In this document: positions 6,401-54,018 of the stretch, in pieces
How the letters are laid out: each line of letters begins with the position of its first letter
How positions within the stretch are numbered: the first letter of the stretch is position 1
Assembly (NCBI GenBank): GCA_002269645.1
Contig: NIVC01002952.1
Coordinates: forward strand, 1 to 64,000
Direction: 5' to 3'
DNA length: 64,000 nt
From: Macrostomum lignano
Taxonomy: Eukaryota
Notes under the pieces: generated by a model
Told to the model about the DNA's origin: nothing
What the model saw: only the letters and a program-made list of their open reading frames with translations
Databases searched by the model: none
Made by a program: the position numbers and the translations under genes

Positions 6401-9172
6401 GACAACCAGCGTGGCATTGCGCTGGAATGTACCACGGCAAAGTTGCTGAATGCTGTGCTGCGCAACCGCCTCCTGCCAGGTCTCAACCCACTGCTGCTGA
6501 GTCTCCAGAGCGGTTTTCGGCCAGGCAGGTCCACCACTGAGCAGGTTGCAACCATCCGCTCAATCATTGAGGCCTGCAAGACCCGCCTCCGCTCCGTGTC
6601 GATTGTCTTCGTGGATTTCCGGAAGGCTTTTGACTCGGTGGCCAGGCTAGCGATTGCATGGCTGCTGTCCTACTACGGCGTCCCCCCTTCACTGGTGGCT
6701 GCGGTGATGGATCTGTACAGCGATTCCAGGGCATTTGTTCAGTCGAGCGACGGCCCCACTGATGAGTTCAGCACAAGCTCTGGCGTCCTTCAGGGCGACA
6801 CGCTGGCTCCTCTGCTTTTCATCATGGTCGTGGACTACGTGCTGCGCCGGTCTCTCCATGATGACGACGGCTATGTGCTAGTCCCACGTCGAAGCTCCCG
6901 ACACCCTGCAGTCCCGCTGCCGGCTCTTGCGTATGCCGACGACATCGCACTCCTCTGTCGCGATCCAGCTGCTGCCCAACGCGCTCTCTTAAGACTCTGC
7001 GAGGAGGGCGCTCGGGTTGGACTGATGATCAACGCACTGAAGACAGAAGTGCTGCACGTGGGCACTGATACCGCCCCGGCACTAGATCTGCCCAACGGAG
7101 ACGCCATCGCGGTGTGCGAGGACTTTCGGTACCTCGGCTCCCTGGTGATGAGTCCCGACTCCATCGTCTCCGACAGAAGGAATCAGGCCTGGCGTGCGGC
7201 GCACCTTCTCAGGAACGTCTTCAACTCTGCTGCAAGAGACAGCCTGAAGGTGCGCCTCTTCCGCGCTGCCGTTGAGCCTATCCTTCTGTACGGCATGGAA
7301 GCAGTGCCGATGACCGCCACGCGAGAGAAAGCCCTGGACGCGCTATACAGGTCCCTGCTGCGCCACGCCCTGGGCGTGCACTACCCGGAGAGGCTGCCGT
7401 CCAGAGACCTGATGGTTCGCGCCGGCGTCCCAGCCCTGAGCGTCACCCTGCGCCGGCGCCGCCAGATGCTGCTGGGCCACTGTCTGAGGAGCCACGGTCG
7501 CGGCGAGCGAAACCCGCTTGCGCTGGTCCTCCTGCACCAACCGACCGAGCGGCTGCGCCGCGGCCAAGGAAGAACTGTGACGCTAATTACCACTCTGTTG
7601 GCTGACTTGCAGGCTATCGGACTTGATCCCCAGTCCGCCATGGCCTGCCCCTCCCGACTGTTCTGCGAGCGCGTGCGCGCAAAAGCTATCTAACTTTTTG
7701 CGTCTATATATATATATACTCGATGCGGACACAGTTATTGCAGTATTTGATACAAGAATATTCCATTAGATTTTGTTGATATTAACTTTGCTGTATAATC
7801 TTTGATTAATTTTCTGCCCAAAAATTTTGTTTATTTCTTTCTTGAAACCTAGGTCGTATTCGACCCACTGCTGCGATTTCACCTAAAAATGGCTGTGGAT
7901 TCTTATTTACATCAGTATCTCTTTTTATCTCATCCCTTCTCACCCTATCTCATCCCTTCTCACCTATCCCATCCTTTCTCACCCCTATCTCATCCCTTCT
8001 CACCCCTATCCCATCCTTTCTCACCCCTATCCCATCCTTTCTCACCCCTATCTCATCCCTTCTCACCTATCTCATCCCATCTCACCCCATCTCATCTCTT
8101 CTCACCCCTATCTCATCCCTTCTCACCCCATCTCATCCTTTCTTATCCCTATCTCATCCCTTCTCATCCCTATCCCATCCTTTTTCACCCCTATCTCATC
8201 CTTTCTCACCCCTATCTCATCCCTTCTCATCCCTATCTCATCCCTTCTCACCTATCTCATCCCATCTCACCCCATCTCATCCCTTCTCATCCCTATCCCA
8301 TCCTTTTTCACCCCTATCTCATCCTTTCTCACCCCTATCTCATCCCTTCTCACCCCTATCTCATCCCTTCTCACCCCTATCTCATCCCTTCTCACCCCTA
8401 TCTCATCCCTTCTCACCCCTATCTCATCCCTTCTCACCCCTATCGAATCTCTATCTCTCCCCCTTGGCTCGTTTATCATCCCATCAAATCCTTTCTCATG
8501 CACACTTGTAAAAACATTTTCTCTAACTTTTTCGCCTTATTCTTAACTATTCTCACCCTCTTCCTCATCTACTCCCATCCGCTTCCAGTCTATTCTCACC
8601 ATTTCTCATCTACTCCCATCCGCTTCCAATCTATTCTCACCATTTGTCATCTACTCCCATCCGCTTCCAATCTATTCTCACCATTTCTCATCTACTCCCA
8701 TCCGCTTCCAATCTATTCTCACCATTTCTCATCTACTCCCATCCGCTTCCAATCTATTCTCACCATTTCTCATCTACTCTCATCCGCTTCCAATCTATTC
8801 TCACCATTTGTCATCTACTCCCATCCGCTTCCAATCTATTCTCACCATTTCTCATCTACTCCCATCCGCTTCCAATCTATTCTCACCATTTCTCATCTAC
8901 TCCCATCCGCTTCCAATCTATTCTCACCATTTCTCATCTACTCCCATCCGCTTCCAATCTATTCTCACCATTTCTCATCTACTCCCATCCGCTTCCAATC
9001 TATTCTCACCATTTCTCATCTACTCCCATCCACTTCCTATCTATTCTCAGCTTGTATCATCTACTCTCACCCACTCCTTATCTACCCCTTCGCATTTCTC
9101 ACCGCACTCAAAGGCCATCGCAGCCACCAGGAAGCGGCCAAGCGCAGTCACCAGCTGCTTCAATCTCGCCAT
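436..9172 (-). CDS. Nicotinic acetylcholine receptor-like (Cys-loop pLGIC) alpha-type subunit, at least 6 exons; 3' end (M4) unresolved
   Basis: Exons: 9172-9103 (signal-peptide-like MARLKQLVTALGRFLVAAMAFEC), 4481-4312 (RPVRDDKTAVTCDLGVSLFHILDT), 4183-4139 (45 bp, SERHQTVSALLSLRL), 4065-3959 (YWVDEYMRWN..IWRPDV), 2153-1615 (Cys-loop CTLDVRYFPFDTQDC, WTY, YPCC, M1, M2 GEKVNLEITVLL), 782-436 (M3 LLFSVTMLMVALAVVMAV plus loop). All introns are GT-AG with matching phases 1,0,0,2,1. No convincing M4 exon found in 1-435. Confidence 0.92.
918..1529. repeat. 20-bp minisatellite (GGGCGCCCCTGTCTCTTGGT)n, ~30 copies, intronic
   Basis: Directly visible tandem unit; explains ORFs 756-1406, 958-1542, 978-1202 and 1136-1342. 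Confidence 0.95.
2218..2575. repeat. 20-bp minisatellite (GAGGGTGACAGAGCAACTGC)n, intronic
   Basis: Visible tandem unit; makes up the spurious N-terminal part of ORF 1595-2611. Confidence 0.95.
2667..3277. repeat. 70-bp higher-order tandem repeat, ~8.7 near-identical copies
   Basis: CATCGGAGAG recurs at 2701, 2771, 2841 ... 3261 (period 70). The unit is built from GAGGGYGACAGCATC submotifs. Confidence 0.95.
4512..4745. repeat. 15-bp minisatellite (CCCCATCCATTCTCA)n
   Basis: Visible tandem unit; gives the spurious TPSIL and MDGVR ORFs. Confidence 0.95.
4990..5360 (+). mobile_element. tRNA-derived SINE with A-rich tail and 13-bp TSD
   Basis: Head GGGGGCGTAGCCCAGCGG (A box) and GGCTCGATTCC (B-box-like); tail TAATAAAAAAATAAATAA; AATCTCAATTTAT flanks it at 4976-4988 and 5361-5373. 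Confidence 0.8.
5807..7717 (+). mobile_element. 5'-truncated non-LTR retrotransposon (RTE-like), RT ORF uninterrupted to its stop at 7693
   Basis: RT motifs QSGFRPGRST, VDFRKAFDSV, GVLQGDTLAP, YADD, FRYLGS; RTE-type C-terminus RRRQMLLGHCLR..RRGQGR; 24-nt 3' UTR ending in (TA)n; perfect TSD ACTCGATGCG at 5797-5806 and 7718-7727; no endonuclease domain. Lies antisense in intron 1 of the receptor gene. Confidence 0.93.
7915..8445. repeat. ~21-bp C/T-rich minisatellite (CTCACCCCTATCTCATCCCTT)n
   Basis: Visible degenerate tandem unit; source of ORF 7889-9253. Confidence 0.9.
8555..9040. repeat. 41-bp minisatellite (CATCTACTCCCATCCGCTTCCAATCTATTCTCACCATTTCT)n, ~12 copies
   Basis: Period 41 (ATCTACTC at 8731 and 8772). 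Confidence 0.93.
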
Positions 9173-9799
9173 CGCTTTTTCTTGTTGCAGACTTTGTTTG
9201 CCAGCAGTTTCAAGCAATTGTTGTTTCTAAGAAGAGAAAAAACTCTGCCCTAATCGGAAATTCTTAGAACCAGTCTGTCCCTGTGCGACTTTCTAAATCC
9301 CAATAGTGCCGCAAATAATATCCTCATTCGCTTGGCCTGAGGCCATGGAGATCACAGAAGTGCAATCTGGAGTCGGGAATAGTAACGGCTGCATACACTC
9401 GTATAAAAACAGCAATAATTACTTATAATGGGATCTAATAGCATCCAACTCCATAAGCTAGTTCTAGATGGCCTTGGCCCAGCCAATCAGAACCGAGCTC
9501 GGGCGATTATCGACAGCCAAATTGGACGGATTATCGTTCGAGCCCTGTGTGTCTAGGCGGGCCATTGTCAGTGCTGAAATTGGCTGACAGATCCGTCATG
9601 ACGGCTTGAGTTGGGGTATCTGTGGCGCGCATCTCCTCTCTCTCAATTCTGACACTGACTTTCACTGGCGACATGAAATATCCGACGGCCAATGTTGCAG
9701 TGCAGATGGGCGCGTTTTGTTTCTGACACTTTCTGCTTTCCATGCGATTGGGATAAGTGCAGGCTTGCTGCCAACAAGGCCACTGGTTCTCCACTGCTC

Positions 9800-10275
9800 T
9801 CTCCTCTCCCTGCCCTCTCCCCCTCCTCTCTCGCATTCTCTCACTCTTCCTCTCCTCTCTCCTTCTCTCCCTCTCTCATCTCCCTCTCTCCTCTCCCTCT
9901 CTCCTTCTCTCCCTCTCATTTATCCTCTCTCATCTCTCCTCTTCTCTCATCTCTCCCTGTCTCCTTTTCTCCTCTCTCATCTCTCCTTCTTTCCCTCTCC
10001 TCTCTCTCTTCTCTCTCTTCTCCTCTCTCCCTCTCCCTCTCTCCTCTCTTTTCTCTCCCTGTCTCCTTCTCTCCCTCTCTCATCGCTCCTTGTCTCCTTC
10101 TCTCCCTCTCTCATCTCTCCTTCTTTCCCTCTCCCCTCTCTCTTCTCCTCTCTCCCTCTCTCATATATCCTTCTCTCCCTCTCCTTCTTTCTCTCTCATC
10201 TCTCATCTCTCCTTCTCTCCCTCTCTCATCTCTCCTCCTCTCTCCCTCTCTCATCTCCTTCTCTCCCTCTCCTCC
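9800..10275. repeat. CT-rich low-complexity polypyrimidine tract
   Basis: Almost purely C/T sequence; gives spurious S/L/P ORFs. Confidence 0.9.
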
Positions 10276-10947
10276 ATCAAACTCTCAATTCTCAACCTAT
10301 TTGATCGATTTTTGTTCGCCAGTTCAAATTGTTTATCTATCACATACGTATGAGTTTCGCAGTTTCCGTTAACTAACTGACCGTTTGGCTTGATTCAGAT
10401 TCAACAGGTTTTACTTCTGTTTACTTAAGCTTGGTGTTTGCAGCCTCCTCCACTCCTATGCAGGTTCCGGACAGGTCAAGTTGGTGGCCGCACTGGGGAG
10501 GTCATAAATAAGAATTAAATTTGCTTACACGAAATTTTGTTTTTCTTCGCTCGCCAACGCGCTAAAAGATTACCGACTGGCTACAGTAGCAGTGTACATG
10601 CAGGATTAAATGATGCATGCACATGCTCCCTGATTCACAAGGGTGTATGGACTGGTCTGAAAAGTAGGGTTTTTGTGTGTGGTTCTTTCCCAATATGCAG
10701 AACTCATAGCATGCAGCTGCTGCGCTATTCCAGTTCCGTGTGAAGCCTTCCGACTTGTCTAAAAAGGGTCTTCGCTAGCTGACTTCTTGCAGTGTATTGT
10801 ACGAGTATTGTGGGCAGCCAAGTATGATCCTAAAGTGCGTTGCTTATAAAAAGTCAAAAACTTTATTTCACCTACTGGACTGTTGAGCTGTGCTGTGCTC
10901 ATGTGTGCTGCTTTGAATATCGCTTGCGACTGGGATTCTCTTCTCCT

Positions 10948-11200: not shown

Positions 11201-11504
11201 GAACATTTTCGCTTCGCTCGCTCTTTCTCGCTATCTACCATCTATTGCCAGGACCTGCACCGGAGCGGTTACGAAAATTAGATTTCTCGGTAGTTGCTCG
11301 CACTCTTTTGCACTACTTGAGTAGTCTGATTTTCGTTCGGCATGGCTGGTTCCAGAAGGTAGTTCCTCTGCATAAAAGCGCTTACCGCGCCCATTGGCTT
11401 TCCAGCTGCCTTAATCGTTTCCGGTGATCTTGTGTGCGTGCTTTCAGCTTGATTGGCTGCGGCATTAGTTGTCTATCTATCGCTTCGCTCGCTCTTTCTC
11501 GCTA

Positions 11505-12285
<781 letters not shown>

Positions 12286-12674
12286 GGTTTCATACGTGAT
12301 CATCCTGCTTCGCAGACTGCCGGAATTATTAGTTTAATGAAGCCAGATTGCAGACATTTTAACAGCCGTCAATAAAAAATTTGCTCCCCTAACTAGTGCT
12401 GACTTTATCGCTAGCCCGTTGCAAGGGAATGCCTGCTAGCAGCAACAGTATCTACCATAAGCACTTCGGTTTTACAAGCTGATTTAATATTCCAACTGTT
12501 TTATATGCTGCACAAGCGATTCCATGTTGTAAAAAAAGTCGTAATGTCGAAAAATTCAATGACACTACTTATTTCTTAAGTGTTCAGTAGACCTCTAGGA
12601 TAATATAAATAAAATTAATTCCAAAAAGAAAAAGAAAGAAAAAAGAAAAAACAGAAGATTTCTGTTCCAAAGAA

Positions 12675-12950: not shown

Positions 12951-13371
12951 CGGCTAAGCCGCATCATTGAAGCTCCAGTGTAATGCTTATCTATATTCTG
13001 ACATGAAAATGAGAGTCCTTTTTAGTAGCACACGCGCAGATTGAACTGCTCCACGGCAGTTTATTGCATGGAAATTCCGGGCAGATCAGAGTCGCCGCAA
13101 CGTGTCAGTCTTGATTGACATGCTTGACCATCCATTGAGTTTTATGGCTTTGATGGTGAAGCTGAGAATTCGCGTACAGTGGGAAACTCCGACTGCACCA
13201 GCCGCTCTGCTTGTACGAGTACTAAGCCAATGAGCGGCTGCACTTTCTTAGCTTGCTTCAGCTTTGCTGCATCCTCCGCGTCTTCTTCTCCAGCTCTGCT
13301 TGACTCTCCCGCTCTGAGCCCTCTCCCGATGCTACACTGAAACTCGCTGTATGCAGCTCCCACATTTTATC

Positions 13372-13833
13372 ACACTCTCTCCCAGTCTCACCCTCTCTAT
13401 CTCAGTCTCACCCTCTCCCAGTCTCACCCTCTCCCAGTCTCACCCTCTCTCTATCTCAGTCTCACCCTCTCCCAGTCTCACCCTCTCCCAGTCTCACCCT
13501 CTCCCAGTCTCACCCTCTCCCAGCCTCACCCTCTCCCAGTCTCACCCTCTCCCAGTCTCACCCTCTCTCTATCTCAGTCTCACCCTCTCCCAGTCTCACC
13601 CTCTCCCAGTCTCACCCTCTCCCAGTCTCACCCTCTCCCAGCCTCACCCTCTCCCAGTCTCACCCTCTCCCAGTCTCACCCTCTCCCAGTCTCACCCTCT
13701 CCCAGTCTTACCCTCTCCCAGTCTCACCCTCTCCCAGTCTCACCCTCTCCCAGTCTCACCCTCTCCCAGTCTTACCCTCTCCCAGTCTCACCCTCTCTCA
13801 GTCTCACCCTCTCCCAGTCTCACCCTCTCCCAG
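13372..13833. repeat. 16-bp minisatellite (CAGTCTCACCCTCTCC)n
   Basis: Directly visible tandem unit. Confidence 0.93.
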
Positions 13834-14085
13834 TATCGCTCTCTCTTACAGTCTTCGATTTTAATGCACTATTATGCTCGCAAGGGTTCCTATTAACCTA
13901 AAAGCTATCGATCAGTTCTAGTGGAAGTAGAACCAGACTATTTCCTTGAATACAAACTGACACTGCTGAAGTGCACTTGAGAGCCTGTCTTAGGCAGAAC
14001 CACAGAAGATTTTCTTTGAGTAAACTTCCGTGAGTTTTCTATTAAATAAATATGCTTATTGATCTATTTATGTATCAAATTACAG

Positions 14086-14863: not shown

Positions 14864-15498
14864 TGACAAGACTGTCTGACAATATCTGACAAGACTGTCT
14901 GACAATATCTGACAAGACTGTCTGACAATATCTGACAAGACTATCTAACAATTTCTGACAAGACTGTCTGACAATATCTGACAAGACTGTCTGACAATAT
15001 CTGACAAGACTGTCTGACAATATCTGACAAGACTGTCTGACAATATCTGACAAGACTGTCTGACAATATCTGACAAGACTGTCTGACAATATCTGACAAG
15101 ACTGTCTGACAATATCTGACAAGACTGTCTGACAATATCTGACAAGACTGTCTGACAATATCTGACAAGACTGTCTAACAATTTCTGACAAGACTGTCTA
15201 ACAATTTCTGACAAGACTGTCTGACAATATCTGACAAGACTGTCTGACAATATCTGACAAGACTGTCTGACAATATCTGACAAGACTGTCTGACAATATC
15301 TGACAAGACTGTCTGACAATATCTGACAAGACTGTCTGACAATATCTGACAAGACTGTCTGACAATATCTGACAAGACTGTCTGACAATATCTGACAAGA
15401 CTGTCTGACAATATCTGACAAGACTGTCTGACAATACCTGACAAGACTGTCTGACAATTTCTGACAAGACTGTCTGACAATATCTGACAAGACTGTCT
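14864..15498. repeat. 23-bp minisatellite (TGACAAGACTGTCTGACAATATC)n, ~27 copies
   Basis: Period 23 (AATATCTGAC at 14881 and 14904). Confidence 0.95.
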
Positions 15499-15592
15499 GG
15501 ATTTATCCGACAACACAAACCAAAAGTACAAGTGCAGCCTGTGACTGCAATGAAATTATTCTTGTCCAACTCTTTAAAATTGAATAATAAAT

Positions 15593-15695
<103 letters not shown>

Positions 15696-15924
15696 AACAA
15701 GAAGGATTAGACTCTGTCCGGATGCGGAACAGAGGCTGGATGCTGTCACAATTCTGCCAGCCAATAAAAGCCTGTCTCTCCAAGGCTATGAGCTCAAAGG
15801 GGATTAGAAGAAGACAGAGCAATGGGAAAATTTTGCTTGGGCAAAAAGCTCTATAAAATTCCCCACAACAATCATTAGCGGCAACATCAATCCTTTTCGA
15901 CATCCTGCCGCCAGTCAGCAGCAA

Positions 15925-16575: not shown

Positions 16576-16765
16576 TTAGTTGTTTATTCACCTGCTTTTT
16601 GATTGCCCGATTAAAATTGATGATTCTCCGGTCTATGATTTGACTGTTTTTCCGAGTACTTTTTTACGATGTACTCGTATTTATGATTATGTATTTTTAT
16701 GTTTGATAAACTCATCTTGCTTATTGCTCAGTCAGTGAAGATTTTTGTTTTGAATATTGTCATGT

Positions 16766-17149
16766 GGGGGAGCCCAGTCTCCATCACCTGGGGAAGCCCA
16801 GTCTTCATCACCTGGGGAAGCCCAGTCTCCATCACCTGGGGAAGCCCCCAGTCTTCATCACCTGGGGAAGCCCCCAGTCTCCATCACCTGGGGAAGCCCC
16901 CAGTCTCCATCACCTGGGGAAGCCCAGTCTCCATCACCTGGGGAAGCCCCCAGTCTCCATCACCTGGGGAAGCCCCCAGTCTCCATCACCTGGGGAAGCC
17001 CAGTCTCCATCACCTGGGGAAGCCCAGTCTTCATCACCTGGGGAAGCCCAGTCTTCATCACCTGGGGAAGCCCAGTCTCCATCACCTGGGGAAGCCCAGT
17101 CTCCATCACCTGGGGAAGCCCAGTCTCCATCACCTGGGGAAGCCCAGTC
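16766..17149. repeat. 24/26-bp minisatellite (GGGGAAGCCC[CC]AGTCTCCATCACCT)n
   Basis: Visible tandem unit with two length variants. Confidence 0.93.
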
Positions 17150-17699
17150 TGACCTGACCAAAGCAATGCTAGTTTTAGCAAACAATTTTCAAGTTTATAA
17201 AGTTTCGTTAGCAGGAAATAATCCTGTCTCGCATTACTAGATATTAAGTCAGAAAAATTAATGGCCTTTAATTAATTTGTACAGCCTTGATCAGCTTCTG
17301 TATATTATATAACTACTAGCAATAAAATATACAAGCACACAAGCACGCAGTATCACGCCGCAGCTCCCCTGCTTTCAGCTTATCAATACAACAATGCTTT
17401 TGATAAAAATTTCAGACAAGTTTTTTCTCTTTTTGTGCCTATTGTGCTGGCTGTCATTCCATAATTGTTTCTGTATTTCTGGCTAGCCTAGCTAGTTTAA
17501 AGAAGGCTAAAATCAATATTATTTTTTATGACTATAAAACAGCCTTAACTGCAAATTCAACTGCTGATAGCACGTAGCAATATACACTCACTGTTTAGCC
17601 AGACAGTAGTGTCTATAGCAAAATCTTTCCGATCTTAATAAAAGCGAAGACAGCCTCTTAAAATCTCTCACTACACTATAGCACTAGCACCTTCGCCAA

Positions 17700-18590
17700 A
17701 CCACACACCACATTATGCCCCCCCCTGAAACCCCACATCATGGCACCCACCCCGAACCCCACACCATGACTCCCACTCCAAACCTCTCACCATCTCATGG
17801 CCACCCCAAATCCCACATCATGGCACCCACCCCAATTCCACACCATGACACCCACCTAAACCCCACACCATGACACCCACCCCAATTCCACACCATGACA
17901 CCCACCTAAACCCCACACCATGACACCCACCCCAATTCCACACCATGACACCCACCCCAAACCCCACACCATGACACCCACCCCAAACCCCACACCATGG
18001 CATCACCCCAAAATCCCACACCATGACACCCACCCCAAACCCCACACCATGACACCCACCCCAAACCCCACACCATGACACCCACTCCAAACCCCACACC
18101 ATGGCACCCACCCCAAACCCCACATCATGGCACCCACCCCAATTCCACACCATGACACCCACCTAAACCTCACACCATGACACCCACCCCAAACCCCACA
18201 CCATGACACCCACCCCAAACCCCACACCATGACACCCACCCCAAACCCCACACCATGACACCCACCCCAAACCCCACACCATGACACCCACCCCAAACCC
18301 CACACCATGACACCCACCCCAAACCCCACACCATGACACCCACCCCAAACCCCACACCATGGCACCCACCCCAAACCCCACACCATGACACCCACCCCAA
18401 ACCCCACACCATGACACCCACCCAAACCCCACACCATGACACCCACCCCAAACCCCACACCATGACACCCACCCAAACCCCACACCATGACACCCACCCA
18501 AACCCCACACCATGACACCCACCCAAACCCCACACCATGACACCCACCCCAAACCCCACACCATGGCACCCACACTATGCCCCACACCAT
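17700..18590. repeat. 25-26-bp C-rich minisatellite (CACACCATGACACCCACCCCAAACCC)n
   Basis: Directly visible tandem unit. Confidence 0.93.
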
Positions 18591-19031
18591 ACTTCACGTG
18601 TCAAACACCAAGATCATGGTCAAAAAGGTATCAGCGCTAGTTATATGCTGATTAAGTCGCATATTAACTTTTAAAGCTAAACTGGTAGGCCAGCAATAAG
18701 CAGAGTGCCCTTATAGCATAGCATAACACTGCAATAAAGATGCTTACATAGAGCTTTCAACATTCATTTCTCTCTCCCTATGCTTCAACCAGCCAGTTAC
18801 CCAGTACACAGGCCACTGCATTCTGTACCGGTATGTACTCTTTTATCTACACTGCGCCGGCTGTTTCTCTGCCCGCAGTGTGCATAAATTATCTCCTATA
18901 TAATTCAAGCATTTGCAAGTATGTTTCTCTCTGGTTAAGTCACAACTGCTGCGAGTGTTCCGCACTGCTATGCAGCTTTGAGCAGCCTGCGATCGCTAAT
19001 AGATTTACTGAGCACAGTTTGCATCTTCCTG

Positions 19032-22000
19032 ATGCAGGGCGCGGACAGGATTCAGCGAGTTGACAGCGAATCTGATTCGCCGTCCACCAGTCAGCAAGAG
19101 TTCCTGTCGGCTGTGGCTACAGGAGACGCGAAAACCCTGCGGCGTTGTGTAGACAACGGAGCGAGCCTCTGCGACACCTTCGACTTCTACCAGATGCGCG
19201 GCTCCCCGCTACAGCTGGCCTGCGCCTTCGGGCAGCTGGCCTCCGTCAAGCTGCTGCTCAGCTTTCGAGCCGACCCGGATCCGCCATCCAATTTAGGCGA
19301 GTCGCCTCTGTTCCTTGCCGCAAAAAACGGTCATCTACAAGTTGTTGACCACCTCATCACACTGCAAGTAGACGTCAACTGTCCGAGCGTCGCCGGCGAG
19401 TCGCCCCTGTTCGCTGCAGCTCAGAATGGCCACCAGAAAGTTGTGCAGTCGCTGATCAGAGCACAAGCCGACGTCAATCTTGGCAATTGCGATGGGGAAT
19501 CGCCAGTTCACATTGCTGTTCGAAACGGTCACATGACAGTGATTGACACCCTCATCAAAGCACAAGCTGACGTCAGTACTCAAGCTAACGATTTCTGCTC
19601 ACCTCTTCACATCGCCTCGCAAATTGGTCATTCGCAGTTTGTTGAGTCATTAATCAGAGCGCTGGCAAATCCCGATCTTCAGACGCAGACAGGCAACTCT
19701 GCCCTACACGTTGCTATTGATAAAGGCCATCTCATGGTAGTTCGCGAACTTCTGAAGGCTCGCTCAGACGTCAATCTAAAAGACAACAGGTTCGGCTCCG
19801 TTCCTCTTCACGTTGCCACCCTGTACGGCAATCTGCCAATGGTGACTGAACTTGTCAAAGCCCATGCCGCCATTGATGCACAAAGAAATAGTGGCGCTAC
19901 AGCTCTCTACATAGCAGCGCAAACTGGCAATCAGCGAGTGCTAGAATTCCTCATCCGAGCACAAGCCGACGTAAATCTTCAGAGGGTCTCGGGAGAATCT
20001 CCTTTGTACGCCGCGTCATTCAACGGGCATACTCGAGTAGTGAGCTCCTTACTTGAAGCCAAAGCCGATGTTAGTCTTCAAGAAAAGAATGACCGCTATT
20101 CGCCGCTTTACATCGCGCTGCAAAACGGTCACGAAGATGTGGGTGAACTGCTGATTAAAGCGCAAGCTGATGTTAACCTGCAGAGCCAGTTTGGCTTGTC
20201 GCCAATTTACATCGCGGCACTGAATTACAGCTTAAAAGCGGTGGAGTCACTCCTCGGAGGGATGGCAGATGTTGATCTTCAGTCTCTCGATGGTGACACA
20301 GCGATTCACGTCGCATCTCAGAACGGCCACAAAGAGATGGTTGACGCGCTCATTCGAGCTCAGGCCAACGTTAATCTTTCCTCGCACAATGGTGAAACAC
20401 CTATTCACTGCGCATCGCACAATGGCCACGCACCGGTAGTGGGCTCGCTTATCAAAGCAGATGCGAGACTAAATCCTCAGAAATACTCTGGTGAAACGCC
20501 GCTACAAGCTGCAGCACTCAACGGCCACTCTGAAGCGGTGAAATTGCTCATCGAAGCCGGAGCAAATGTCAATTTGCAGAGAGCTGGCGGCGAGACTGCT
20601 CTCTACATCGCTGCCAATGGAGGTTACAATCAAATTGTTGACTCGCTGATCAAGGCTCACGCCATTGTAGATTTGCAGCAGGTCACAGGCGAGACGCCGC
20701 TGAACATTGCCTCTCACAATGGTCACCCGAAAGTGGTCGAATTGCTAATCAAAGCTCAAGCAGACGTCAATCTACAAAAAGACGACGGTTGTCCACCGAT
20801 ATTCATCGCGTCGCAGAATGGTTATCACGAAGTGGTTGACCTACTTATTAAAGCCCAAGCGGACGTCAATCTTCAAACAAACGATGGCGAGGCAGCTTTG
20901 CACATTGCATCGTATAAGGGTCATCGACGTGCTGTTGAGTTGCTTATCGAAGCACAAGCTGATGTCGACATTTTGACAAGTTCAGGCTCTTCAGCTTACT
21001 ATTTTGCAATCTTTAGTTCACATCAGGATATAGTGGACTTGCTAGCAACCGCTCAGGCCGATATTGACACCCTTCTTGACGAAAGATTTAAAGTAATCAA
21101 AGTTCCTAACCTTGTAGAGCGACGCTTTGTGGACGAAGCGTCTCTCATTGACGCAGACGGTTTGTCGAATTTAAGCAACGCGTCGGATTTCGACTACGGC
21201 GCTATGTCGGATGTGGAAGAAACAGTGCTAAAATTCGTTCTGAGGTCAAAGAATAGTTCACAGAGTGAGGATTCAGAGGAAATAGATGAGCCTAGTGTTG
21301 AAAAGTGGGTATATACAGGTTATATTGGTTTCTAAATGTTTTCGTATAGCTCGATCGTATCTACGAATAGATGACAAAAACTTGCTTACGATTTCAGTGC
21401 TGTTCCGCCAAGCGATGCCGAGCTCAGCCTGCAGTTGCACGCGAAACTTTCTCAGTCCGGATTCTTAGACACCAGAGCTGCTCTGCAAACCTCAGTTGCG
21501 GACGTACTGCAGAAGATCCTAAGAAAAAGACTAAACAACAATGGAATCTATGTTGTTGGTAGCTACTCAGAAGGCTGGGGAAACAATTTGAAAACGGTGG
21601 ACGGTAGAACGGACATAGAGTCGGACATCGACATGATGCGGCTGATTGCGGGCAAGCTCTACCATCCTAGGGGAGTGTGCAAGTGCGGCGGGGCGGTTGT
21701 TCAGCAAGAGTTCAGCAACGGTCACATTGTGTGCCCCGGATTTGGTAAGAGCTTGGAAATCAACATTCATCAGTAGCATGTAGCACAGGTTCGTCTGCAA
21801 AAAGTGATTGATACAATTTGCATTGCAGCATCGAACCCGTCTGAAGCATCATACGGATCCAATCTGAGACCGGCGGTGGACCACGTGGTCGCCAGTCGTC
21901 TGTGCAGCTACCCGGCCATCGCGCCACTGCTGCCAGATCGAGTGTCCAAGTCCAAAATTCCCAAGCCGGTGCTGCGGTCACTTCAGCAGCACATTGACGC

Positions 22001-23252
22001 TTTTGATACATCGCCCTGTCACGTGGTGCACGCTGCTTCTCCTGGTCGAGGTGGCCATGAGCTTCGGGTGAGCACCAGCTTCCTTGAGAGACTGCTACTG
22101 CGAAGTCTCAACACAGTCCAGGGTCAGATGTTCATCGCACTGAAGTACCTCGTCAAGAAGGTGATAACGCACGAGTCTGGCTACAATGTGAAGGGCGTCA
22201 AGCCGTACCATGTAAAAACCATCACGTTTCGAATGCTGGAGAAAACATCGCCCGAGGAATGGCGGCCAGAAAATCTCGTCAATCTCACAAGACAGTCAAT
22301 GCAGATGCTAGCTGACAGTGTTGAGAGCAGCTGCACTCCTGACAATATTCATGGTCAAGTCCTGAGCCATTTTTTCTTGGACGATGCCGCGTTGTATCTC
22401 AAAGGCGTTGACAACAAAAGAGCCTCAATCGAGTCTACACTGAAAAACATCGCAGACACCCTTAGAACAGTGATTGATCAGCTGCCGTCGCTGCTGATGC
22501 AGTTTAAGAACAGTCTCAAGCCGCTGGATGAGTCGGCCAGATTCTACTTTCATCCATTTCTAATCCTGCCAATTGTAATGTCTAATCCGGTAAGCGATTC
22601 TAGCAGTATCGAATACTGGGAGATTCCGGACGTGATTAACAGCTGTCTGTTGCGCCTTTCCCATGGCATTGTCAACGCGAGCTCGCTAGCGTCACTCACA
22701 GAGCTGATCGCCAGATTGCCAAACTGCGCCCGCTCGGCGCGGGAGGCCCTCAAAGCGCTGGCCTGTCTCAAGTTTGGCAACCGACATGCTGCAGCAAAAG
22801 TCATAGGCGACTGCCGAGGTCACGAGGTGAGCAGAGGTATCGATTGGCCTGCTGAGAGGTCATTGTCTGAGGCTACACCCGAGGCTGTGTGGCAACACCT
22901 ACTGAGCTGTGACTCGGCTTGGAAGTTCTGCTTGCGGTTTGAGCAGCGTCCTCAGCTTCAGTTCGTGACTGGTGCCCTGGCTGAGTGCTTTCCGCTGCAG
23001 ATGGGGCTTAACAGTGTCTCATTTTTCTACATGAACTTCGACGCGCTGCTGTGGGCTCTGCGGCTCGAGCTGGGGACTGAAAGCCAGAATACCGCGGCGG
23101 AATGGATTGAGGATGTGGCTCAACGAGAAGACGCAGACGAGCAGGAGCTGCTGGTGGCTGAGAAGTACTGCAGCCCCGACACCGAGTTGAAGCGAGAGCT
23201 GGACGAGAAGATTCGCCAGCTGCAGCTGAGACAGCTGGCCAGACCGTATTGA
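19032..23252 (+). CDS. Ankyrin-repeat / cGAS-like (Mab-21 family, cGLR-type) nucleotidyltransferase fusion, ~1347 aa, 3 exons
   Basis: Exons 19032-21304, 21398-21744, 21829-23252. Introns: GTGGGT..TTTCAG (93 bp, phase 2) and GTAAGA..TTGCAG (84 bp, phase 1). Total 4044 nt, in frame. About 20 ANK repeats, then NTase motifs VVGSYSEG..SDID (21558-21632), third Asp in AVDHVVA (21879), LRVSTSFLERLLL, KPYHVKTITF, EWRPENL, SHFFLDD. The true start may lie in an upstream exon (acceptor at 19037). Confidence 0.88.
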
Positions 23253-23539
23253 ATTCTTGCGACTCAGCATGCAATTACCTGTTACTTAAAGCGTTTCTAG
23301 AGAACGCACAATGTGAGTGAGTGTGTTCCATCTTCCGAAATGAATGACTACGAAACTCTTTAAGTTAATTGCAGTTGCTCGTTTTTCTTTCTTTCTTCCG
23401 CACACACATCACGGTTTATACTCGGATTTTAGCTGAATGAGCATGCACTATCCAGATGTGACGTAGTCATTGAGCTAATGGGACTAGGCGTGCGTATTAG
23501 TTACGTCGAATATTATATAATTTGATATACTGTCCGTCC

Positions 23540-24023
<484 letters not shown>

Positions 24024-24699
24024 TAGCTGATTTTTTCGTTTGAGTTCGGAGTCATTTGATTTTTAAATAGTTCTGCGTTCATTGCAATTTTATTTTATTT
24101 TATTTTAACAATCCTGACAGAAAATTCGTTTCTGTAATTGCAACCTACGAACACTTTTTCGAGTCGCATTAGGCTTAAAAATGCCTTCGTCGAGCTGAAG
24201 AACGTCAATGCAGTTTGAGAGACAGAGAGTATCCGGTTTTTCGCGAGGGAACCGCGAGTCGTATGCAAATATCATATTTGGCAGAATATTTTTCGTTTTA
24301 GTTCGAAGTTTCTCGATATTTGTATAGTTCTGCATTCGTTACAGTTTTAATTTTTTGGAATCAAGCTGTGATTACTTTTTTATATTGCAATTTGCTTTAA
24401 AACGCCTTACAACACGTACGAGACAGTAACGAAATCACAAAATATATTTATATACCAAACCCCCTAGGAAACTTACGGTGGAGATTCTCAGCTTTACTAG
24501 TATTATATCAGAGCTTTTTGAGACGCGATTGGGCTTTTCTCATGGCCAACAGTAAGTTTTTGCTTATCTGACCTGTACACTTTCTTGTCTTTGTTAGCAG
24601 AACAATTGAGATCACTCTACCGTAAGGTGCCATACTGATGGAGGACGTTTGGACAAGTCTTCCACAAAGCGTGGTCTATTTAGGCGTAAAGTATTTCCA

Positions 24700-33779: not shown

Positions 33780-36075
33780 TTGGAAAGTATTGCACTAAAA
33801 AAAGCTGCTGATGATTTAATTAATTAATTGGCACTTGACTTTGATAATGTAGCTTCAAGCTTTCTTGATTTGATGAATCCCACAATTTTACTGTGTCATT
33901 TATACCACCCACCCACCCATCTACCCCACTCCACTTTGTGTTTTGCTTTCATGTTTATCCTTTACTGCTACGAGTATAAGCTAATCTGCCGGCTATCGCA
34001 GGCTACAAGGGTGTAAAAAATATGCTGAAATCCACAAGCCATCAAGCAATCTGTAAGCCACACTGATGAATAGAATTCCAAACAGCAGTGTAGGGGTTAA
34101 CCTCTAGTATCTGCCCTCCCCCTGGGTCTTTACCCTCCATAATCTGCCCCCTGGGTATTTACCCTCTAGAATCTGCCTTTTTCCCCTCTAGGTCTTTACC
34201 CTCCAGAATCTACCATTGGGTCTTTACTTTCCAGAATCCACCCCTTAGGTATTTAGTACATTACTACATTTGTACCCCCATTGTTAGCCTATCACTATCT
34301 CACTTTTCTTTGCCGCCAGTTCCCCTGTTTCTTTTCTATTCAAAAGTTTAAACTGATGTGTTGTCTAGTCTAGACTTTGTAAAAAGCCACTTACACTCAG
34401 TTTGTATCTCATTACTAATTTGTCATTAAGGTTGAGGAAATTGAAGAAAGAAATTTCCCATTTTTAGTGCATAAATCTTTTGTAGAAAAAACAATGTGCA
34501 GTTACAATTTACAATAAAAGTGCAGGCCAGATTATAATATTGAAGATAAAGGAAGTTTGTAGGCCGCATAGAAAGTCTTTGTCAGTTAGATCTGGCCTGT
34601 AGGCCAGAGGTTGCCAACCCTTGGCCTAGAATGATACTTCTTGCGCTACTGCTACTTAAATGTTATCTGTGCACTATCTACAAGTATATATTGTTTGTAG
34701 ATGCCTTTTTATGTCCACAATCTAGAACTTATAGCCAATTAATAATATTTCATTGAAAAAGCAAGATGAGTTTTAAGGTTCTTTCAGTATATATTTTTAT
34801 GTTTTTTAAGAAAATTGTAGTAGCATAATCCTTTTTATGTATCATCAATAGTGACTTAACTTTTAGATTTAAAGATTTAGATAATAGAAATAATGTTTTT
34901 ATTATAAAAAAAATAGCAAAGTATTGTAAAGGATCAATATATAATAACTTTTTTCATTAGAAAACATTTTTCATAACTTATTATTTTGTAAAATTATAAA
35001 GACCTCGTAATGCCATTTGACATTCTAGATTCAAATTTAAGATGCCAAACTATAAACTAGGATTCTAGCAAGCAATGGTCAACTTTTTAAAAATCAAATA
35101 TAATATCAATATCTTTAAATACTGTTTTTTCATTGCTAAGCCTCTAGCTTATTCGTCTATTATATCACTCAAATGTGCTAATGCCATTGGCTATATTCCT
35201 ATTGTAGTCATAGTTTAAGGCTAAATTGGAATCTTATCTTAGCTCTGTTTATGTAATCAATATCTTTGAAACCAACCTCCAATGCATAGTAAAGTGTATA
35301 TGCCTAACAATAAATAAAGTTGGGGCTATTATATACTTATCAGAATGTGCGCCTGCTCAGGGCCAAGAGAACTAGTAGAATAGGCAAGTTATGTAAGAAT
35401 GTCACTTGAAGTTTGCTAGAGTACATATATCCTTTGGTTCTAACTAAAAAACCTAAGAGCCTCTGCAACCCAAAGAAGTTTTAGAAGTCTGCAGATTGAT
35501 GTTGATAGATTACTCATCTTTGACAATAGATAGAATAGTCTTTAATTTCTAAGTATCCCAATAGTTTTCAAATCATTAATATTTTGAATAGAATGTAAAA
35601 TACAGAAAAATATTAATTTATTAAACCCTGCTTTGAAATTAGTGCCAATTAGACATCTCCTAGATGATTGTAGATGATTGATCAACTTATAAATGTCACT
35701 TGAACTAAATCAGAATAAATTGTTTGCTGGCTTCTACAAGCATAATGATTGTTGTAGATTTGGCCATAGGTATAAGTAACAATAATCATCTATGCGGCTT
35801 TTTTTCCAACAGCAGTTGCATCTATTGAAGCAACTGAAATGAATAAATTTGAGTATTTTAAATAGCAACCCTTAGAATCAGATACTTTTTGTGTCAGCTT
35901 ATTTAACTTTTTTGGCAGTCTGTGGGTCAGAGAGGCTCCAAAATGTAAATGTTAAGGTAGAGATGCTGGTGTTTTATCTGATTTTGAATTTATCAGCAGA
36001 GGTAAACTGGGTTTTTGACAGAAAACAGGCCAATGTTTACCATAGAGAAATAACTGAAATTATCTGCATGCCCGC

Positions 36076-37119
36076 ATGACAGGCCTTCCCGACCACTCAG
36101 CCGGCCAGTTGTTGCCAGCGGACTCAGCCGACCCACCGCCAGCCCCAGCCGGCCACGTGAAGCGGCCAATGAACCCGTTTATGGTTTGGGCCAAACTGCG
36201 ACGGAAAGCCATCGCTAAAGAGAATCCCAAGATGCACAACTCTGAGATCAGTAGGAAGCTGGGCGAAGAATGGAAAACAATGCCGGATGATGAGAAGAAA
36301 GGCTACATAGACGAGGCAAACAGACTCAAGGATGAGCACAAGAGAGCGAATCCCGGCTATAAGTACAAGCCGAAGTCGAAGAAACGCGCCGCAGGCGCAG
36401 CCTCTACTGGAGCCGCAGCGCCCGCTGGCCAACAGCAGAAACCGCAGCAAAAATCCAAAGCGCAACAGAAGCAAAAGCAGCAGTCGATGACGCCAGAAGA
36501 TCACCTGAGCGTGCAGCACCAGCAGCAGCAGTTGTACCACGCCTATCCAGACAATAACAATGCAGCCGTCTCGGGGTACCCAGCCAACCAGCAGTTGCTA
36601 GGCCAGCACCATCAGCAGAGTCTGCAACAACAGTTGAATCTGCTATCTAGCGCTCATCAGCATCACCAGATTAGTGGCTATCAAATGCTCCTAGCGCCTG
36701 AGCAGCAGCAGCAGCAGCCTCAGAATCTGTACTCTCCATATGTTGATCCGCATCACATGCAGTCGGCTCTTCTGTTGCAGCAGCAGCAGCAGCAGCACTA
36801 TCACCAGCAGCATTATGACCAACAGTCTGCTTTTTCTAACTTGGACTCCTCGGCAACTCTGGACATGCAGCAGCAGCCGCAGCATCAAATGTACAGCGGA
36901 TTGACCGCTGCTTATGCTGCTGACCCGTCCATTTACCTGCAGTCTCTGCAGCAGCAGCAGCAATCTGCTGGCATGGCCGAGCAGATCCCTGTGCCATCCA
37001 ATCACTCGTCTAGCGCCTACTCAGGCGATTACGATGTGTTGGCGAACGGCGGCGGCGGCGGTGGTGGCAGCGCCGGGAGCGACGAGCAGCGGCAGACAGT
37101 GCCGCTGACCCTCATCTGA
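36076..37119 (+). CDS. soxB1: SoxB1-type HMG-box transcription factor, intronless, Gln-rich (347 aa)
   Basis: HMG box HVKRPMNPFMVW..PKMHNSEISRKLGEEWK..YKYKPK; the C-terminus QTVPLTLI matches the TVPLTHI/TLPLSHM end of Sox1/2/3; single exon, as is typical for SoxB genes. Confidence 0.85.
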   Translation: MTGLPDHSAGQLLPADSADPPPAPAGHVKRPMNPFMVWAKLRRKAIAKENPKMHNSEISRKLGEEWKTMPDDEKKGYIDEANRLKDEHKRANPGYKYKPKSKKRAAGAASTGAAAPAGQQQKPQQKSKAQQKQKQQSMTPEDHLSVQHQQQQLYHAYPDNNNAAVSGYPANQQLLGQHHQQSLQQQLNLLSSAHQHHQISGYQMLLAPEQQQQQPQNLYSPYVDPHHMQSALLLQQQQQQHYHQQHYDQQSAFSNLDSSATLDMQQQPQHQMYSGLTAAYAADPSIYLQSLQQQQQSAGMAEQIPVPSNHSSSAYSGDYDVLANGGGGGGGSAGSDEQRQTVPLTLI

Positions 37120-39031: not shown

Positions 39032-39579
39032 CTACCAGAGTTCAGAAAAGTTAAAATATCTATACGCATCAAAATAGAAACTTTAATATTAGTATGGTTA
39101 GTAAATTAGCTGCTACCTTGCCTGTACTATCATGGCTTTCTTATCAGTATTTTGTTGTTAGGCTTTGCACCAATATATATTATACTACTGCCAATGGTTA
39201 GAATCTAACAAATTAACTAATTAGCCAACCATCTACGCCTTATAGTTTATGTCAGTCCAGTTTAACAACGCAAACTGATAAGCATTAAATTTTTTCATAA
39301 TATCTGCATCTTGCTACTTTCATCGACCTGATGAATATTTTTACTCTTTTTACTCTACATGTAGTCATTTTTTTCCATTTTCGCAACGATGTTTTATAAT
39401 AGCTTGGACTAAAGATTTTCTTCTTTGCCTTCGTTTGCCATTCAGCCAGTCTTGTTTAAATCGAATTTCTCCACAGTTTCGTATTTACACTTTTGTCTAA
39501 GTTGCTCAGCTGTATAATAATGCCGCCCTCTGCTTGCATCCTCTGGTTCACTTCAACGTTCAATTATTCTGTTATATTC

Positions 39580-45754: not shown

Positions 45755-45885
45755 CTTGGTAACCTACTCCCAGATTAAGTTCATTTTTTTCACAAAATTT
45801 TTACTTTCTCAAGAGGCTACAAAAACCAGTGAGTTGAAGCAGAAAAACACAAGAGAGACTTCTTCCGTAGACGACCTGGCAAGCG

Positions 45886-54018
<8,133 letters not shown>

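What the first reader, a model, noticed from the sequence alone, without database searches (positions are those of the whole stretch)
19032..23252. One gene fuses ~20 ankyrin repeats to an apparently active cGAS-like nucleotidyltransferase: candidate innate-immune sensor
Seen: the ORF track shows three separate ORFs, but two short GT-AG introns (21305-21397, phase 2; 21745-21828, phase 1) join them into one 1347-aa frame. It reads as a long ANK solenoid, an acidic linker, then an NTase with GS (21558), D-x-D (21624-21632), a third Asp (21879) and Mab-21 helical motifs (LRVSTSFLERLLL, KPYHVKT, HFFL). Established: cGAS, Mab-21 and cGLR enzymes share this fold, and active members make cyclic dinucleotides when they sense a ligand; MAB21L-type members lack a full triad. 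Inference: the ANK array may be a ligand- or pathogen-protein-binding, or autoinhibitory, module gating second-messenger synthesis. My unverified recollection is that cGAS-STING components are sparse in flatworms, which would raise the interest if the host is one. No STING-like effector is visible in this window.
Basis: partly seen in the sequence, partly recalled or inferred. Interest (0 to 1): 0.9.

Follow-up and report, generated by a model that had tools for sequence, protein, structure and literature searches.

The report
Flatworm ankyrin–cGAS-like enzyme fusion gene
This is a real, already annotated gene of the flatworm Macrostomum lignano that joins about 20 ankyrin repeats to a cGAS-like enzyme with an intact active site. 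It is one of at least 73 such loci in a genome where I found no STING, and what these proteins sense or signal to is unknown.

Summary
Three + strand ORFs (18939-21335, 21375-21776, 21777-23252) join through two GT-AG introns (21305-21397, 21745-21828) into a 1347-aa frame. GenBank already holds this product as PAA54193.1 (BOX15_Mlig010266g1, Macrostomum lignano), with the same junctions, from an RNA-seq-based annotation.

- **Domains:** about 20 ankyrin repeats, an acidic linker, an NTase domain and a roughly 190-aa C-terminal extension specific to this family.
- **Fold:** the AlphaFold model (pLDDT 88.9) best matches human cGAS, then MAB21L1 and MB21D2.
- **Active site:** GS, D-I-D and the third Asp lie on the expected strands. 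They are kept in 29 of 30 paralog loci checked.
- **Selection:** against the gene's 98% copy, dN/dS is 0.26 overall and 0.17 for the NTase core.
- **Family size:** at least 73 loci in this genome, a lower bound. All strong relatives in public data are M. lignano.
- **Prior work:** Li et al. 2023 already list ANK-cGLR fusions, including M. lignano ones. They screened five M. lignano paralogs (32-36% identical to this one), and none is labelled among their 15 active enzymes.
- **STING:** not detected in this genome, though that search is not conclusive.

It is a new member of a known kind. Ligand, product and receptor are unknown.

The parts
18918..18938 (+). Pyrimidine tract plus AG, a possible spliced-leader trans-splice acceptor directly before the start of the GenBank CDS
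   Evidence: Sequence read; identical in both near-identical copies. The M. lignano spliced leader ends in ATG (PMC8629364). That this site is used is inference only.
18939..19031 (+). 31 in-frame codons upstream of the first ATG, included in the 5'-partial GenBank model; either 5' UTR or coding
   Evidence: Copy C650 has a 1-nt insertion here, which may be an assembly error.
19032..21304 (+). Exon 1: first ATG, ankyrin array and acidic linker
19095..21101 (+). Ankyrin solenoid: 18 canonical 33/34-aa repeats (motif positions 59-622) plus degenerate N and C caps, about 20 repeats
   Evidence: Pfam Ank_2 E 8.5e-127 and Ank E 7e-118. Periodicity. Repeat-to-repeat variation is highest at positions 1, 2, 3, 5, 13, 17, 18, 21, 22 and 27.
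21102..21304 (+). Acidic linker, residues 691-757, pI 4.05 (17 D/E against 5 K/R)
21305..21397 (+). Intron 1 (93 nt, phase 2, GT-AG); contains the in-frame stop at 21333-21335
   Evidence: Same junction in PAA54193.1. Splice sites identical in the copies.
21398..21744 (+). Exon 2: N-terminal helices and NTase N-lobe, with GS (21558-21563) and D-I-D (21624-21632)
21663..21725 (+). Conserved His-x4-Cys-x-Cys-x12-His cluster (H90, C95, C97, H110 of the NTase part), a candidate metal site
   Evidence: Nearly invariant in 46 family sequences. The region is modelled at pLDDT 85-90. Geometry was not checked.
21745..21828 (+). Intron 2 (84 nt, phase 1, GTAAGA...TTGCAG)
   Evidence: The same exon 2 / exon 3 boundary is seen in 28 of the 30 paralog loci, with a separating intron of about 87-1069 nt wherever it could be measured.
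21829..23252 (+). Exon 3: third catalytic Asp (21879-21881), Mab-21 C-lobe, C-terminal extension, stop codon at 23250-23252
22131..22397 (+). Mab-21_C (HhH/H2TH-like) helices, including KPYHVKT and HFFL
   Evidence: PF20266 E 5.3e-5, 23.7 bits against a 24.1 cut-off. Family profile hits cGAS chains in the PDB at E 0.0015. hhalign to Sp-cGLR1 gives 82% probability.
22677..23249 (+). Family-specific C-terminal extension (about 190 aa, helices plus two short strands), with no confident structural or Pfam match
   Evidence: pLDDT mostly 82-97. Only weak TPR-like matches, probability below 0.2. No Pfam hit. Conserved among paralogs.

Best explanation
Window 19032-23252 (+) is one three-exon gene of Macrostomum lignano (GenBank PAA54193.1).

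**What it encodes.** A soluble protein of about 1350 aa with four parts. First come about 20 ankyrin repeats, then an acidic linker. Next is a cGAS/Mab-21-fold nucleotidyltransferase with a complete catalytic set: G812-S813, D834-x-D836 and D891 in full-length numbering. Last is a C-terminal helical extension of about 190 aa that is specific to this family.

**Where it belongs.** It is one member of a large Macrostomum-specific expansion of ANK-cGLR genes, at least 73 loci.

**Most likely mechanism.** This part is inferred, not shown. The protein probably works as a cGAS-like receptor. The NTase rests in an inactive state, and binding of a ligand releases synthesis of a nucleotide second messenger from NTPs. 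The ligand could bind the concave face of the ankyrin solenoid or the basic NTase core (pI 9.0). The ankyrin array, the acidic linker or both would act as sensor or autoinhibitor.

**Open end.** No STING was detected in the genome, so the receptor of any product is unknown.
For: **One gene**
- The spliced frame is open over 1347 aa.
- It is identical to a transcript-derived GenBank model.
- At least 13 other NCBI transcript-based paralog models show the same ANK + NTase fusion.
- The intron 2 position is kept across paralog loci.

**Fold**
- The AlphaFold model of the spliced 590-aa C-terminal part has pLDDT 88.9 and pTM 0.90.
- Its best PDB match is the human cGAS-DNA complex 6ct9_A (E 1.1e-6, probability 1.0, target-normalised TM 0.58).
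- Next come other cGAS chains, MAB21L1 and MB21D2, then more weakly CdnG, OASL and OAS1.
- By sequence, the only PDB hits of the family profile are cGAS and cGLR1.

**Active site**
- G55-S56 follows strand 1 (residues 51-54).
- D77 and D79 lie on strand 77-89, and D134 lies on strand 132-141.
- D-I-D-M, 52 residues, then V-D-H fits the published cGLR motif [DE]h[DE]h X50-90 h[DE]h, although the last position here is His rather than a hydrophobic residue.
- These residues are at least 90% conserved in 46 family sequences.
- They are present in 29 of 30 paralog loci.

**Constraint**
- Against the 98% copy there are 35 synonymous and 30 non-synonymous changes, giving dN/dS 0.26.
- By region, dN/dS is 0.17 for the NTase core and 0.40 for the ankyrin part.

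**Features typical of immune-receptor families**
- At least 73 loci, several in local clusters on C558, C1673, C1795 and C176.
- Variable ankyrin length, with models of 820-1960 aa.
- The family is restricted to M. lignano in a library clustered from about 15 billion proteins.
- Repeat-to-repeat variation includes the canonical ankyrin binding-face positions 2, 3, 5 and 13.
- Li et al. 2023 place M. lignano relatives among the cGLRs.
Against: - No activity data exist for this protein.
- The five M. lignano NTase constructs in the published 140-enzyme screen carry no 'active' label. They are only 32-36% identical to this one, and they were tested without their ankyrin arrays and only with dsDNA and poly I:C.
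- STING_LBD (PF15009) and the human STING C-terminal domain found nothing credible in the 764-Mb assembly, so the canonical downstream receptor seems to be missing.
- The Pfam Mab-21_C score lies just under the curated cut-off, and PF03281 does not match at all.
- Profile-profile alignment to an active cGLR covers only the C-lobe. Equivalence of the catalytic residues therefore rests on motif, strand position and overall fold match, not on a residue-level superposition.
- The variable ankyrin positions also include ordinary surface positions (17, 18, 21, 22), so that signal is weak.
Confidence: 0.6

Rival explanations
1. The protein is a nucleotide-binding but non-catalytic Mab-21-type scaffold. 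Like MAB21L1 or MiD51, the NTase fold would serve as a regulated protein module and the ankyrin array would recruit partners. No second messenger would be made.
For: MAB21L1 chains rank almost as high as cGAS in the fold search. No STING was found. None of the five screened M. lignano paralogs is labelled active. At least one distant paralog (PAA93319.1) has D-x-N in place of D-x-D and carries a caspase domain.
Against: GS, DxD and the third Asp are kept in 29 of 30 paralog loci and at 90% or more across 46 sequences. MAB21L-type proteins have lost most of these residues (PMC4117786). The true Mab-21 orthologue is a separate gene present in three copies. The NTase core has dN/dS 0.17.
Confidence: 0.2
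2. The NTase is active but its output is not a STING-type cyclic dinucleotide. It could make linear 2'-5' oligonucleotides as OAS does, some other cyclic or linear nucleotide, or nucleotidylate a protein or RNA. The product would be read by a receptor unique to this lineage, possibly the family's own C-terminal extension or its ankyrin array.
For: The catalytic residues are complete. STING was not detected. The C-terminal domain is conserved and matches no known fold. OAS and OASL appear among the weaker fold matches. Li et al. note that cGLRs may control STING-independent responses.
Against: cGAS matches far better than OAS (E 1e-6 against 0.04-0.4). Nothing points directly to any particular product or receptor.
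Confidence: 0.12
3. The fusion is an artefact. On this reading there are two genes: an ankyrin protein ending at the 21335 stop and a separate NTase gene.
For: Intron 1 holds an in-frame stop, so a retained-intron mRNA would encode an ankyrin-only protein. Read-level RNA-seq was not available to me.
Against: The transcript-derived GenBank model uses both junctions. Exon 2 has no ATG-initiated ORF of its own that covers the N-terminal helices. More than 13 independent paralog models are fused in the same way. All four splice sites are identical in the diverged copy.
Confidence: 0.03
4. The gene is a decaying duplicate, an expressed pseudogene in a redundant, recently duplicated genome.
For: The two near-identical copies on C650 and C4186 each carry 1-nt indels. 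The genome has large-scale redundancy (PMC5730564).
Against: The window copy is open over all 1347 codons and dN/dS against the other copy is 0.26. C650 and C4186 are identical in every substitution and differ only in separate single-base indels. That pattern looks like assembly error rather than decay.
Confidence: 0.03

Closest known systems
ANK-fused cGAS-like receptors (cGLRs) catalogued by Li et al. 2023 (Cell; preprint PMC9980059), including M. lignano PAA86972.1, PAA45980.1, PAA68676.1, PAA58690.1, PAA67649.1 and PAA68216.1
   Same: Same species and same architecture, with N-terminal ankyrin repeats before a Mab-21/cGAS NTase. The motif block GS-x-x-EGWG...SD[IV]D...P-x-x-D...RVSTSFLE...YH[AV]KT...HFF is shared. 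Matches have E 1e-54 to 1e-71.
   Different: Identity to the five screened constructs is only 32-36%. The window gene belongs to a larger subfamily, at least 73 loci at 50-62% identity. Its accession is not in the held, truncated parts of their tables. No ANK-cGLR has a known ligand or product.
Vertebrate cGAS (for example human cGAS, PDB 6ct9)
   Same: Best structural match (E 1.1e-6, target-normalised TM 0.58). The GS, acidic pair and third Asp lie on equivalent strands. The SYHVKT and HYF/HFF C-lobe motifs are shared. The NTase core is basic, pI 9.0.
   Different: Sequence identity is about 13%. There is no disordered basic N-terminus. The GS-to-DxD loop is longer (21 residues against 12). 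The H/C/C/H cluster lies before the third Asp, not at the position of the vertebrate H(X5)CC(X6)C zinc thumb. It has an extra ankyrin array and C-terminal extension. No STING partner was detected.
MAB21L1 / MAB21L2 (developmental Mab-21 proteins)
   Same: Same fold (5eom, E about 6e-6).
   Different: Those proteins have lost most catalytic residues (PMC4117786) and match PF03281. The window protein keeps all of them and does not match PF03281. The genuine M. lignano Mab-21 orthologue lies elsewhere: C401, C402 and C835, E 2e-34.
Bivalve and coral cGLR expansions (for example Mercenaria mercenaria XP_053407825.1; Stylophora pistillata with 42 cGLRs, three of them fused to ANK or death domains)
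   Same: These are lineage-specific radiations of cGLRs in marine invertebrates, some fused to ankyrin or death domains. The nearest named relative outside Macrostomum is a clam protein.
   Different: Similarity to the clam protein is limited to the NTase core (profile positions 118-270, E 1.6e-10). Li et al. describe multiple STING genes alongside the cGLR radiations in such species, seven in S. pistillata. None was found here.

Membership tests
cGAS-like receptors (cGLR; catalytically competent Mab-21-superfamily NTases) | Bilobal cGAS/Mab-21 nucleotidyltransferase fold | tested here: met
   AlphaFold model with pLDDT 88.9 and pTM 0.90. The 26 PDB matches with E <= 0.001 are all cGAS, MAB21L1 or MB21D2, each at probability 1.0.
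cGAS-like receptors (cGLR; catalytically competent Mab-21-superfamily NTases) | Active-site signature: hG[GS] followed by [DE]h[DE]h, X50-90, h[DE]h | tested here: met
   V-G55-S56; D77-I-D79-M; 52 residues; V-D134-H, so the final position is His rather than a hydrophobic residue. These lie on strands 51-54, 77-89 and 132-141. Conserved at 90% or more in 46 sequences and in 29 of 30 loci. Motif definition taken from Li et al.. No residue-level superposition on cGAS could be made.
cGAS-like receptors (cGLR; catalytically competent Mab-21-superfamily NTases) | Mab-21 C-lobe sequence signature (Pfam PF20266) | tested here: inconclusive
   E 5.3e-5, 23.7 bits against a cut-off of 24.1. The family profile hits only cGAS and cGLR1 in the PDB (E 0.0015). 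hhalign to Sp-cGLR1 gives 82% probability.
cGAS-like receptors (cGLR; catalytically competent Mab-21-superfamily NTases) | Ligand-dependent synthesis of a nucleotide second messenger | not testable with these tools
   This needs biochemistry. Five distant paralogs were in a published screen and none is labelled active.
cGAS-like receptors (cGLR; catalytically competent Mab-21-superfamily NTases) | A cognate STING receptor encoded in the same genome (the usual partner, not strictly defining) | tested here: inconclusive
   PF15009 gave 0 candidates. The human STING C-terminal domain gave a best E of 2.2, with stops inside the match. The same tool finds PF03281 three times in this genome. Exon-by-exon search of a divergent gene could still miss it.
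ANK-cGLR fusion architecture (Li et al. 2023, Fig. 1C and Table S2) | Ankyrin repeats and a cGLR NTase in one polypeptide | tested here: met
   definition.
MAB21L1/2-type developmental Mab-21 proteins | Match to the Pfam Mab-21 N-terminal domain (PF03281) with degenerate catalytic residues | tested here: not met
   No PF03281 hit and the catalytic set is complete. The real orthologue is a different gene.
2'-5' oligoadenylate synthetases (OAS) | OAS-type fold as the closest structural relative | tested here: not met
   OASL has E 0.039 and OAS1 has E 0.40, far behind cGAS at 1e-6.

The most novel reading that the evidence does not exclude
Macrostomum lignano may run a large cGLR signalling system that does not use STING. 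Dozens of ANK-cGLR sensors with a family-specific C-terminal domain would make nucleotide signals read by a receptor not yet known in animals, or would couple directly to death-fold or caspase modules, as the ANK-NTase-ANK-caspase paralog PAA93319.1 hints. That would break the reported rule that species have both cGAS and STING or neither (PMC4117786).
Probability: 0.2. Interest if true: 0.75.

Novelty: new member of a known kind. Interest (0 to 1): 0.4.

Why it matters
Flatworms are usually described as having lost cGAS and STING: Schistosoma in PMC4117786, the planarian Schmidtea in PMC13563047, and 'most platyhelminthes' in Li et al. 2023. M. lignano is the exception. It has at least 73 loci of ankyrin-fused cGAS-like enzymes that keep their active sites and are under purifying selection.

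No ANK-cGLR has a known ligand, product or receptor. If these enzymes are active and STING really is absent, this worm would be a good place to look for a new nucleotide-signal receptor in animals, since transgenesis has been established in it (PMC5730564). It could also show what ankyrin arrays sense.

The fusion itself is not a discovery. It is annotated and catalogued.

Tried and rejected
- I used a family alignment instead.
- **Read-through model.** A first structure model read through intron 2 with TAG=Q, which added a 28-aa insert. Its N-lobe was poor (pLDDT 71). I kept it only as a weaker confirmation of the fold. The spliced sequence was accepted once PAA54193.1 had been returned.
- **Residue mapping.** hhalign of the family against Sp-cGLR1 aligned only the C-lobe, so it does not map the catalytic residues.
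- **Viral structures.** A fold search against viral structures found nothing.
- **Caspase-fused paralog.** The look-up of encoding contigs had no record for it.
- **STING search.** The tool's built-in controls for PF15009 rang nowhere. I added a human STING query and a positive control of the tool on this genome with PF03281. The result is still not conclusive.
- **Literature.** Searches for the locus tag and for functional work on ANK-cGLRs found nothing beyond Li et al..
- **C650 and C4186 indels.** I considered that they mark pseudogenes and rejected this. The two copies are otherwise identical to each other, so assembly error is more likely.
- **Neighbouring genes as partners.** I rejected this. 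They are a nicotinic-receptor-like fragment, a LINE reverse transcriptase, a SOX-type HMG box and a C2H2 finger.
Full report
**Observation**

The region holds three + strand ORFs: 18939-21335, 21375-21776 and 21777-23252. The sequence shows a GT at 21305 and an AG at 21396-21397. It also shows a strong GTAAGA donor at 21745 and a TTGCAG acceptor ending at 21828. Removing these two introns and starting at the ATG at 19032 gives a 4044-nt CDS, which is 1347 aa plus the stop.

GS is at 21558, D-I-D at 21624-21632 and the third Asp at 21879. The N-terminal 757 aa match the ankyrin families with E down to 1e-127. They contain 18 canonical repeats at exact 33/34-aa spacing plus degenerate caps. Residues 691-757 form an acidic linker of pI 4.05.

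**Host and annotation**

All homologues of the C-terminal 590 aa come from the flatworm Macrostomum lignano. The window's assembly has 764.4 Mb in 5269 contigs. This fits the published Mlig_3_7 assembly of 764,424,962 bp in 5270 scaffolds (PMC5730564).

A search with the full-length product returned PAA54193.1, 'hypothetical protein BOX15_Mlig010266g1, partial', on an 87,877-bp contig. That is the length of the window's contig.

The GenBank annotation of this assembly was derived from a genome-guided RNA-seq transcriptome built with StringTie, TACO and TBONE. The fusion is therefore an already annotated, transcript-supported single gene. At least 13 other NCBI transcript-based paralog models have the same ANK + NTase arrangement.

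**Fold and active site**

Pfam sees only Mab-21_C in the C-terminal part, just under its cut-off (E 5.3e-5, 23.7 against 24.1 bits), and no PF03281. A family profile hits only cGAS (E 0.0015) and cGLR1 among all PDB sequences.

The AlphaFold model of the true spliced 590 aa, built with 46 family sequences, is confident (pLDDT 88.9, pTM 0.90). Its best PDB match is the human cGAS-DNA complex 6ct9_A (E 1.1e-6, probability 1.0, target-normalised TM 0.58). Other cGAS chains, MAB21L1 and MB21D2 follow. CdnG, OASL and OAS1 are much weaker.

In the model, G55-S56 follows strand 51-54. D77 and D79 sit on strand 77-89, and D134 sits on strand 132-141. This is the layout of the Pol-beta-type NTase signature. 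It also fits the cGLR motif [DE]h[DE]h X50-90 h[DE]h used by Li et al., with 52 residues between the two elements, although the last position is His rather than a hydrophobic residue. I could not superpose residues, and the profile-profile alignment to an active cGLR covers only the C-lobe. The catalytic equivalence therefore rests on motif, strand position and overall fold.

These residues are at least 90% conserved in 46 family sequences. They are present in 29 of 30 paralog loci inspected at the DNA level, and 28 of those loci show the same exon 2 / exon 3 boundary.

Residues from about 400 to 590 of this part form a confidently modelled extension of helices and short strands. It has no credible structural or Pfam match. 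H90, C95, C97 and H110 are nearly invariant and may form a metal site.

**Family and selection**

The NTase part finds at least 73 loci with the large 3' exon in this genome, and only three of them contain stops. Just 74 of 1116 first-look candidates were scored, so 73 is a lower bound. Some loci are redundant haplotigs, and several form local clusters.

In a library clustered from about 15 billion proteins, every one of the 15 hits with E between 1e-137 and 1e-13 whose source I looked up is from M. lignano. Below that, one unnamed hit at E 8e-12 and three at about 1e-11 to 1e-9 from unnamed assemblies could not be placed. The nearest named outsider is a clam protein that matches only the NTase core.

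Two copies on C650 and C4186 are 97.8% identical to the window gene. They are identical to each other except for separate single-base indels, so those indels are probably assembly errors. Between the window gene and that copy there are 35 synonymous and 30 non-synonymous changes, giving dN/dS 0.26. By region, dN/dS is 0.17 for the NTase core, 0.40 for the ankyrin part and 0.30 for the C-terminal extension. This indicates purifying selection, although the counts are small.

Among the 18 repeats, variation is highest at positions 1, 2, 3, 5, 13, 17, 18, 21, 22 and 27. That set includes four of the canonical binding-face positions but also ordinary surface positions, so it is only weak support for ligand binding.

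**What is already known**

Li et al. [quoted passage not shown] Their Table S2 lists M. lignano proteins with Ank_2 domains. Their Table S3 includes five M. lignano NTase constructs (rows 89-93) in the 140-protein screen.

The label column that marks the 15 chosen active enzymes, for example '09. Sp-cGLR1', is empty for those five rows. The window's NTase is 32-36% identical to them. Its accession is not in the held parts of the tables, which are truncated. I found no paper on the function of any ANK-cGLR or on this locus.

**STING**

The STING_LBD profile gave no candidate in the assembly. The human STING C-terminal domain gave only a chance-level match, E 2.2 with stops inside it. The same tool finds the true Mab-21 orthologue three times in this genome (E 2e-34), so it does work on this assembly.

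The search runs exon by exon on a divergent target, so absence is not proven. Published surveys report that cGAS and STING were lost together in Schistosoma and that species have both or neither (PMC4117786). Schmidtea lacks both (PMC13563047). M. lignano would be an exception if the absence holds.

**Interpretation**

*Shown:* one transcript-supported gene; about 20 ankyrin repeats; an acidic linker; a cGAS/Mab-21 fold with a complete and conserved catalytic set; a family-specific C-terminal domain; a large species-restricted family under purifying selection.

*Inferred:* the protein acts as a cGAS-like receptor whose NTase makes a nucleotide signal when a ligand binds, with the ankyrin array or acidic linker as sensor or autoinhibitor. 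The NTase core is basic (pI 9.0) and the whole protein is acidic (pI 5.55). Li et al. link a positive surface to nucleic-acid sensing, but this is only a hint.

*Rivals:* a non-catalytic scaffold; an active enzyme with a product or receptor that is not of the STING type; a gene-model artefact; a decaying duplicate. The last two are poorly supported.

**Verdict**

Its structural reading is supported, and its functional reading remains untested. The finding is a new member of a known, already catalogued kind, not a discovery of the architecture. What remains interesting is the size of the expansion in a phylum thought to lack the pathway, the apparent lack of STING, and the uncharacterised C-terminal domain.

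Noticed in passing
window 18918-19031: A pyrimidine tract plus AG ends at 18938, and the 5'-partial GenBank CDS starts at 18939. The M. lignano spliced leader ends in ATG (PMC8629364), so a trans-spliced mRNA could start translation in frame 32 codons upstream of the ATG at 19032. Copy C650 has a 1-nt insertion near 18987, which argues against coding unless it is an assembly error.
   Followed up: partly
window 21663-21725: H-x4-C-x-C-x12-H (H90, C95, C97, H110 of the NTase part) is nearly invariant in 46 paralogs. It may be a zinc knuckle in the insertion between the DxD strand and the third-Asp strand. This is a different position from the vertebrate cGAS zinc thumb.
   Followed up: partly
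window 22677-23249: The C-terminal extension of about 190 aa is confidently modelled and conserved across the family. It has no Pfam hit and no credible match in the PDB or viral structure libraries.
   Followed up: partly
L035 (G000:C650:107400-112400) and L036 (G000:C4186:30100-35100): Two copies are 97.8% identical to the window gene. They are identical to each other in all substitutions but carry different single-base indels: two in C650 (near window 18987 and 20300) and one in a T-run in C4186. These are probably redundant haplotigs with assembly indel errors, not pseudogenes.
   Followed up: yes
elsewhere in G000 (protein P0113 = PAA93319.1, 2111 aa): This distant paralog model carries a long helical N-terminal region, ankyrin repeats, an NTase with D-x-N in place of D-x-D, more ankyrin repeats and a C-terminal caspase domain (Peptidase_C14, E 2.8e-27). 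It hints at direct coupling to cell-death machinery. The gene model was not verified.
   Followed up: partly
L032-L034 (G000:C401:225876-226424, C402:75870-76418, C835:100786-101334): The canonical Mab-21 orthologue (PF03281, E 2e-34, uninterrupted ORF of about 410 aa) is present in three copies and is separate from the ANK-cGLR family.
   Followed up: no
window 756-2628, 4422-5012, 7846-10372, 11428-12299, 13304-13901, 14945-15785, 16687-17240, 17818-18600, 23484-24062, 38043-40153, 45212-46010, 47197-48044, 54094-56106: Tandem and low-complexity repeats give long open frames on both strands that are not genes. The gene is flanked on both sides by such arrays, at 17818-18600 and 23484-24062.
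   Followed up: no
window 1595-2620 (-), 5741-7693 (+), 36058-37119 (+), 45886-46347 (-): The neighbours are an exon of a neurotransmitter-gated ion channel, a LINE-type reverse transcriptase ORF, a SOX-like HMG-box ORF and a weak C2H2 finger ORF. None is related to the finding.
   Followed up: partly
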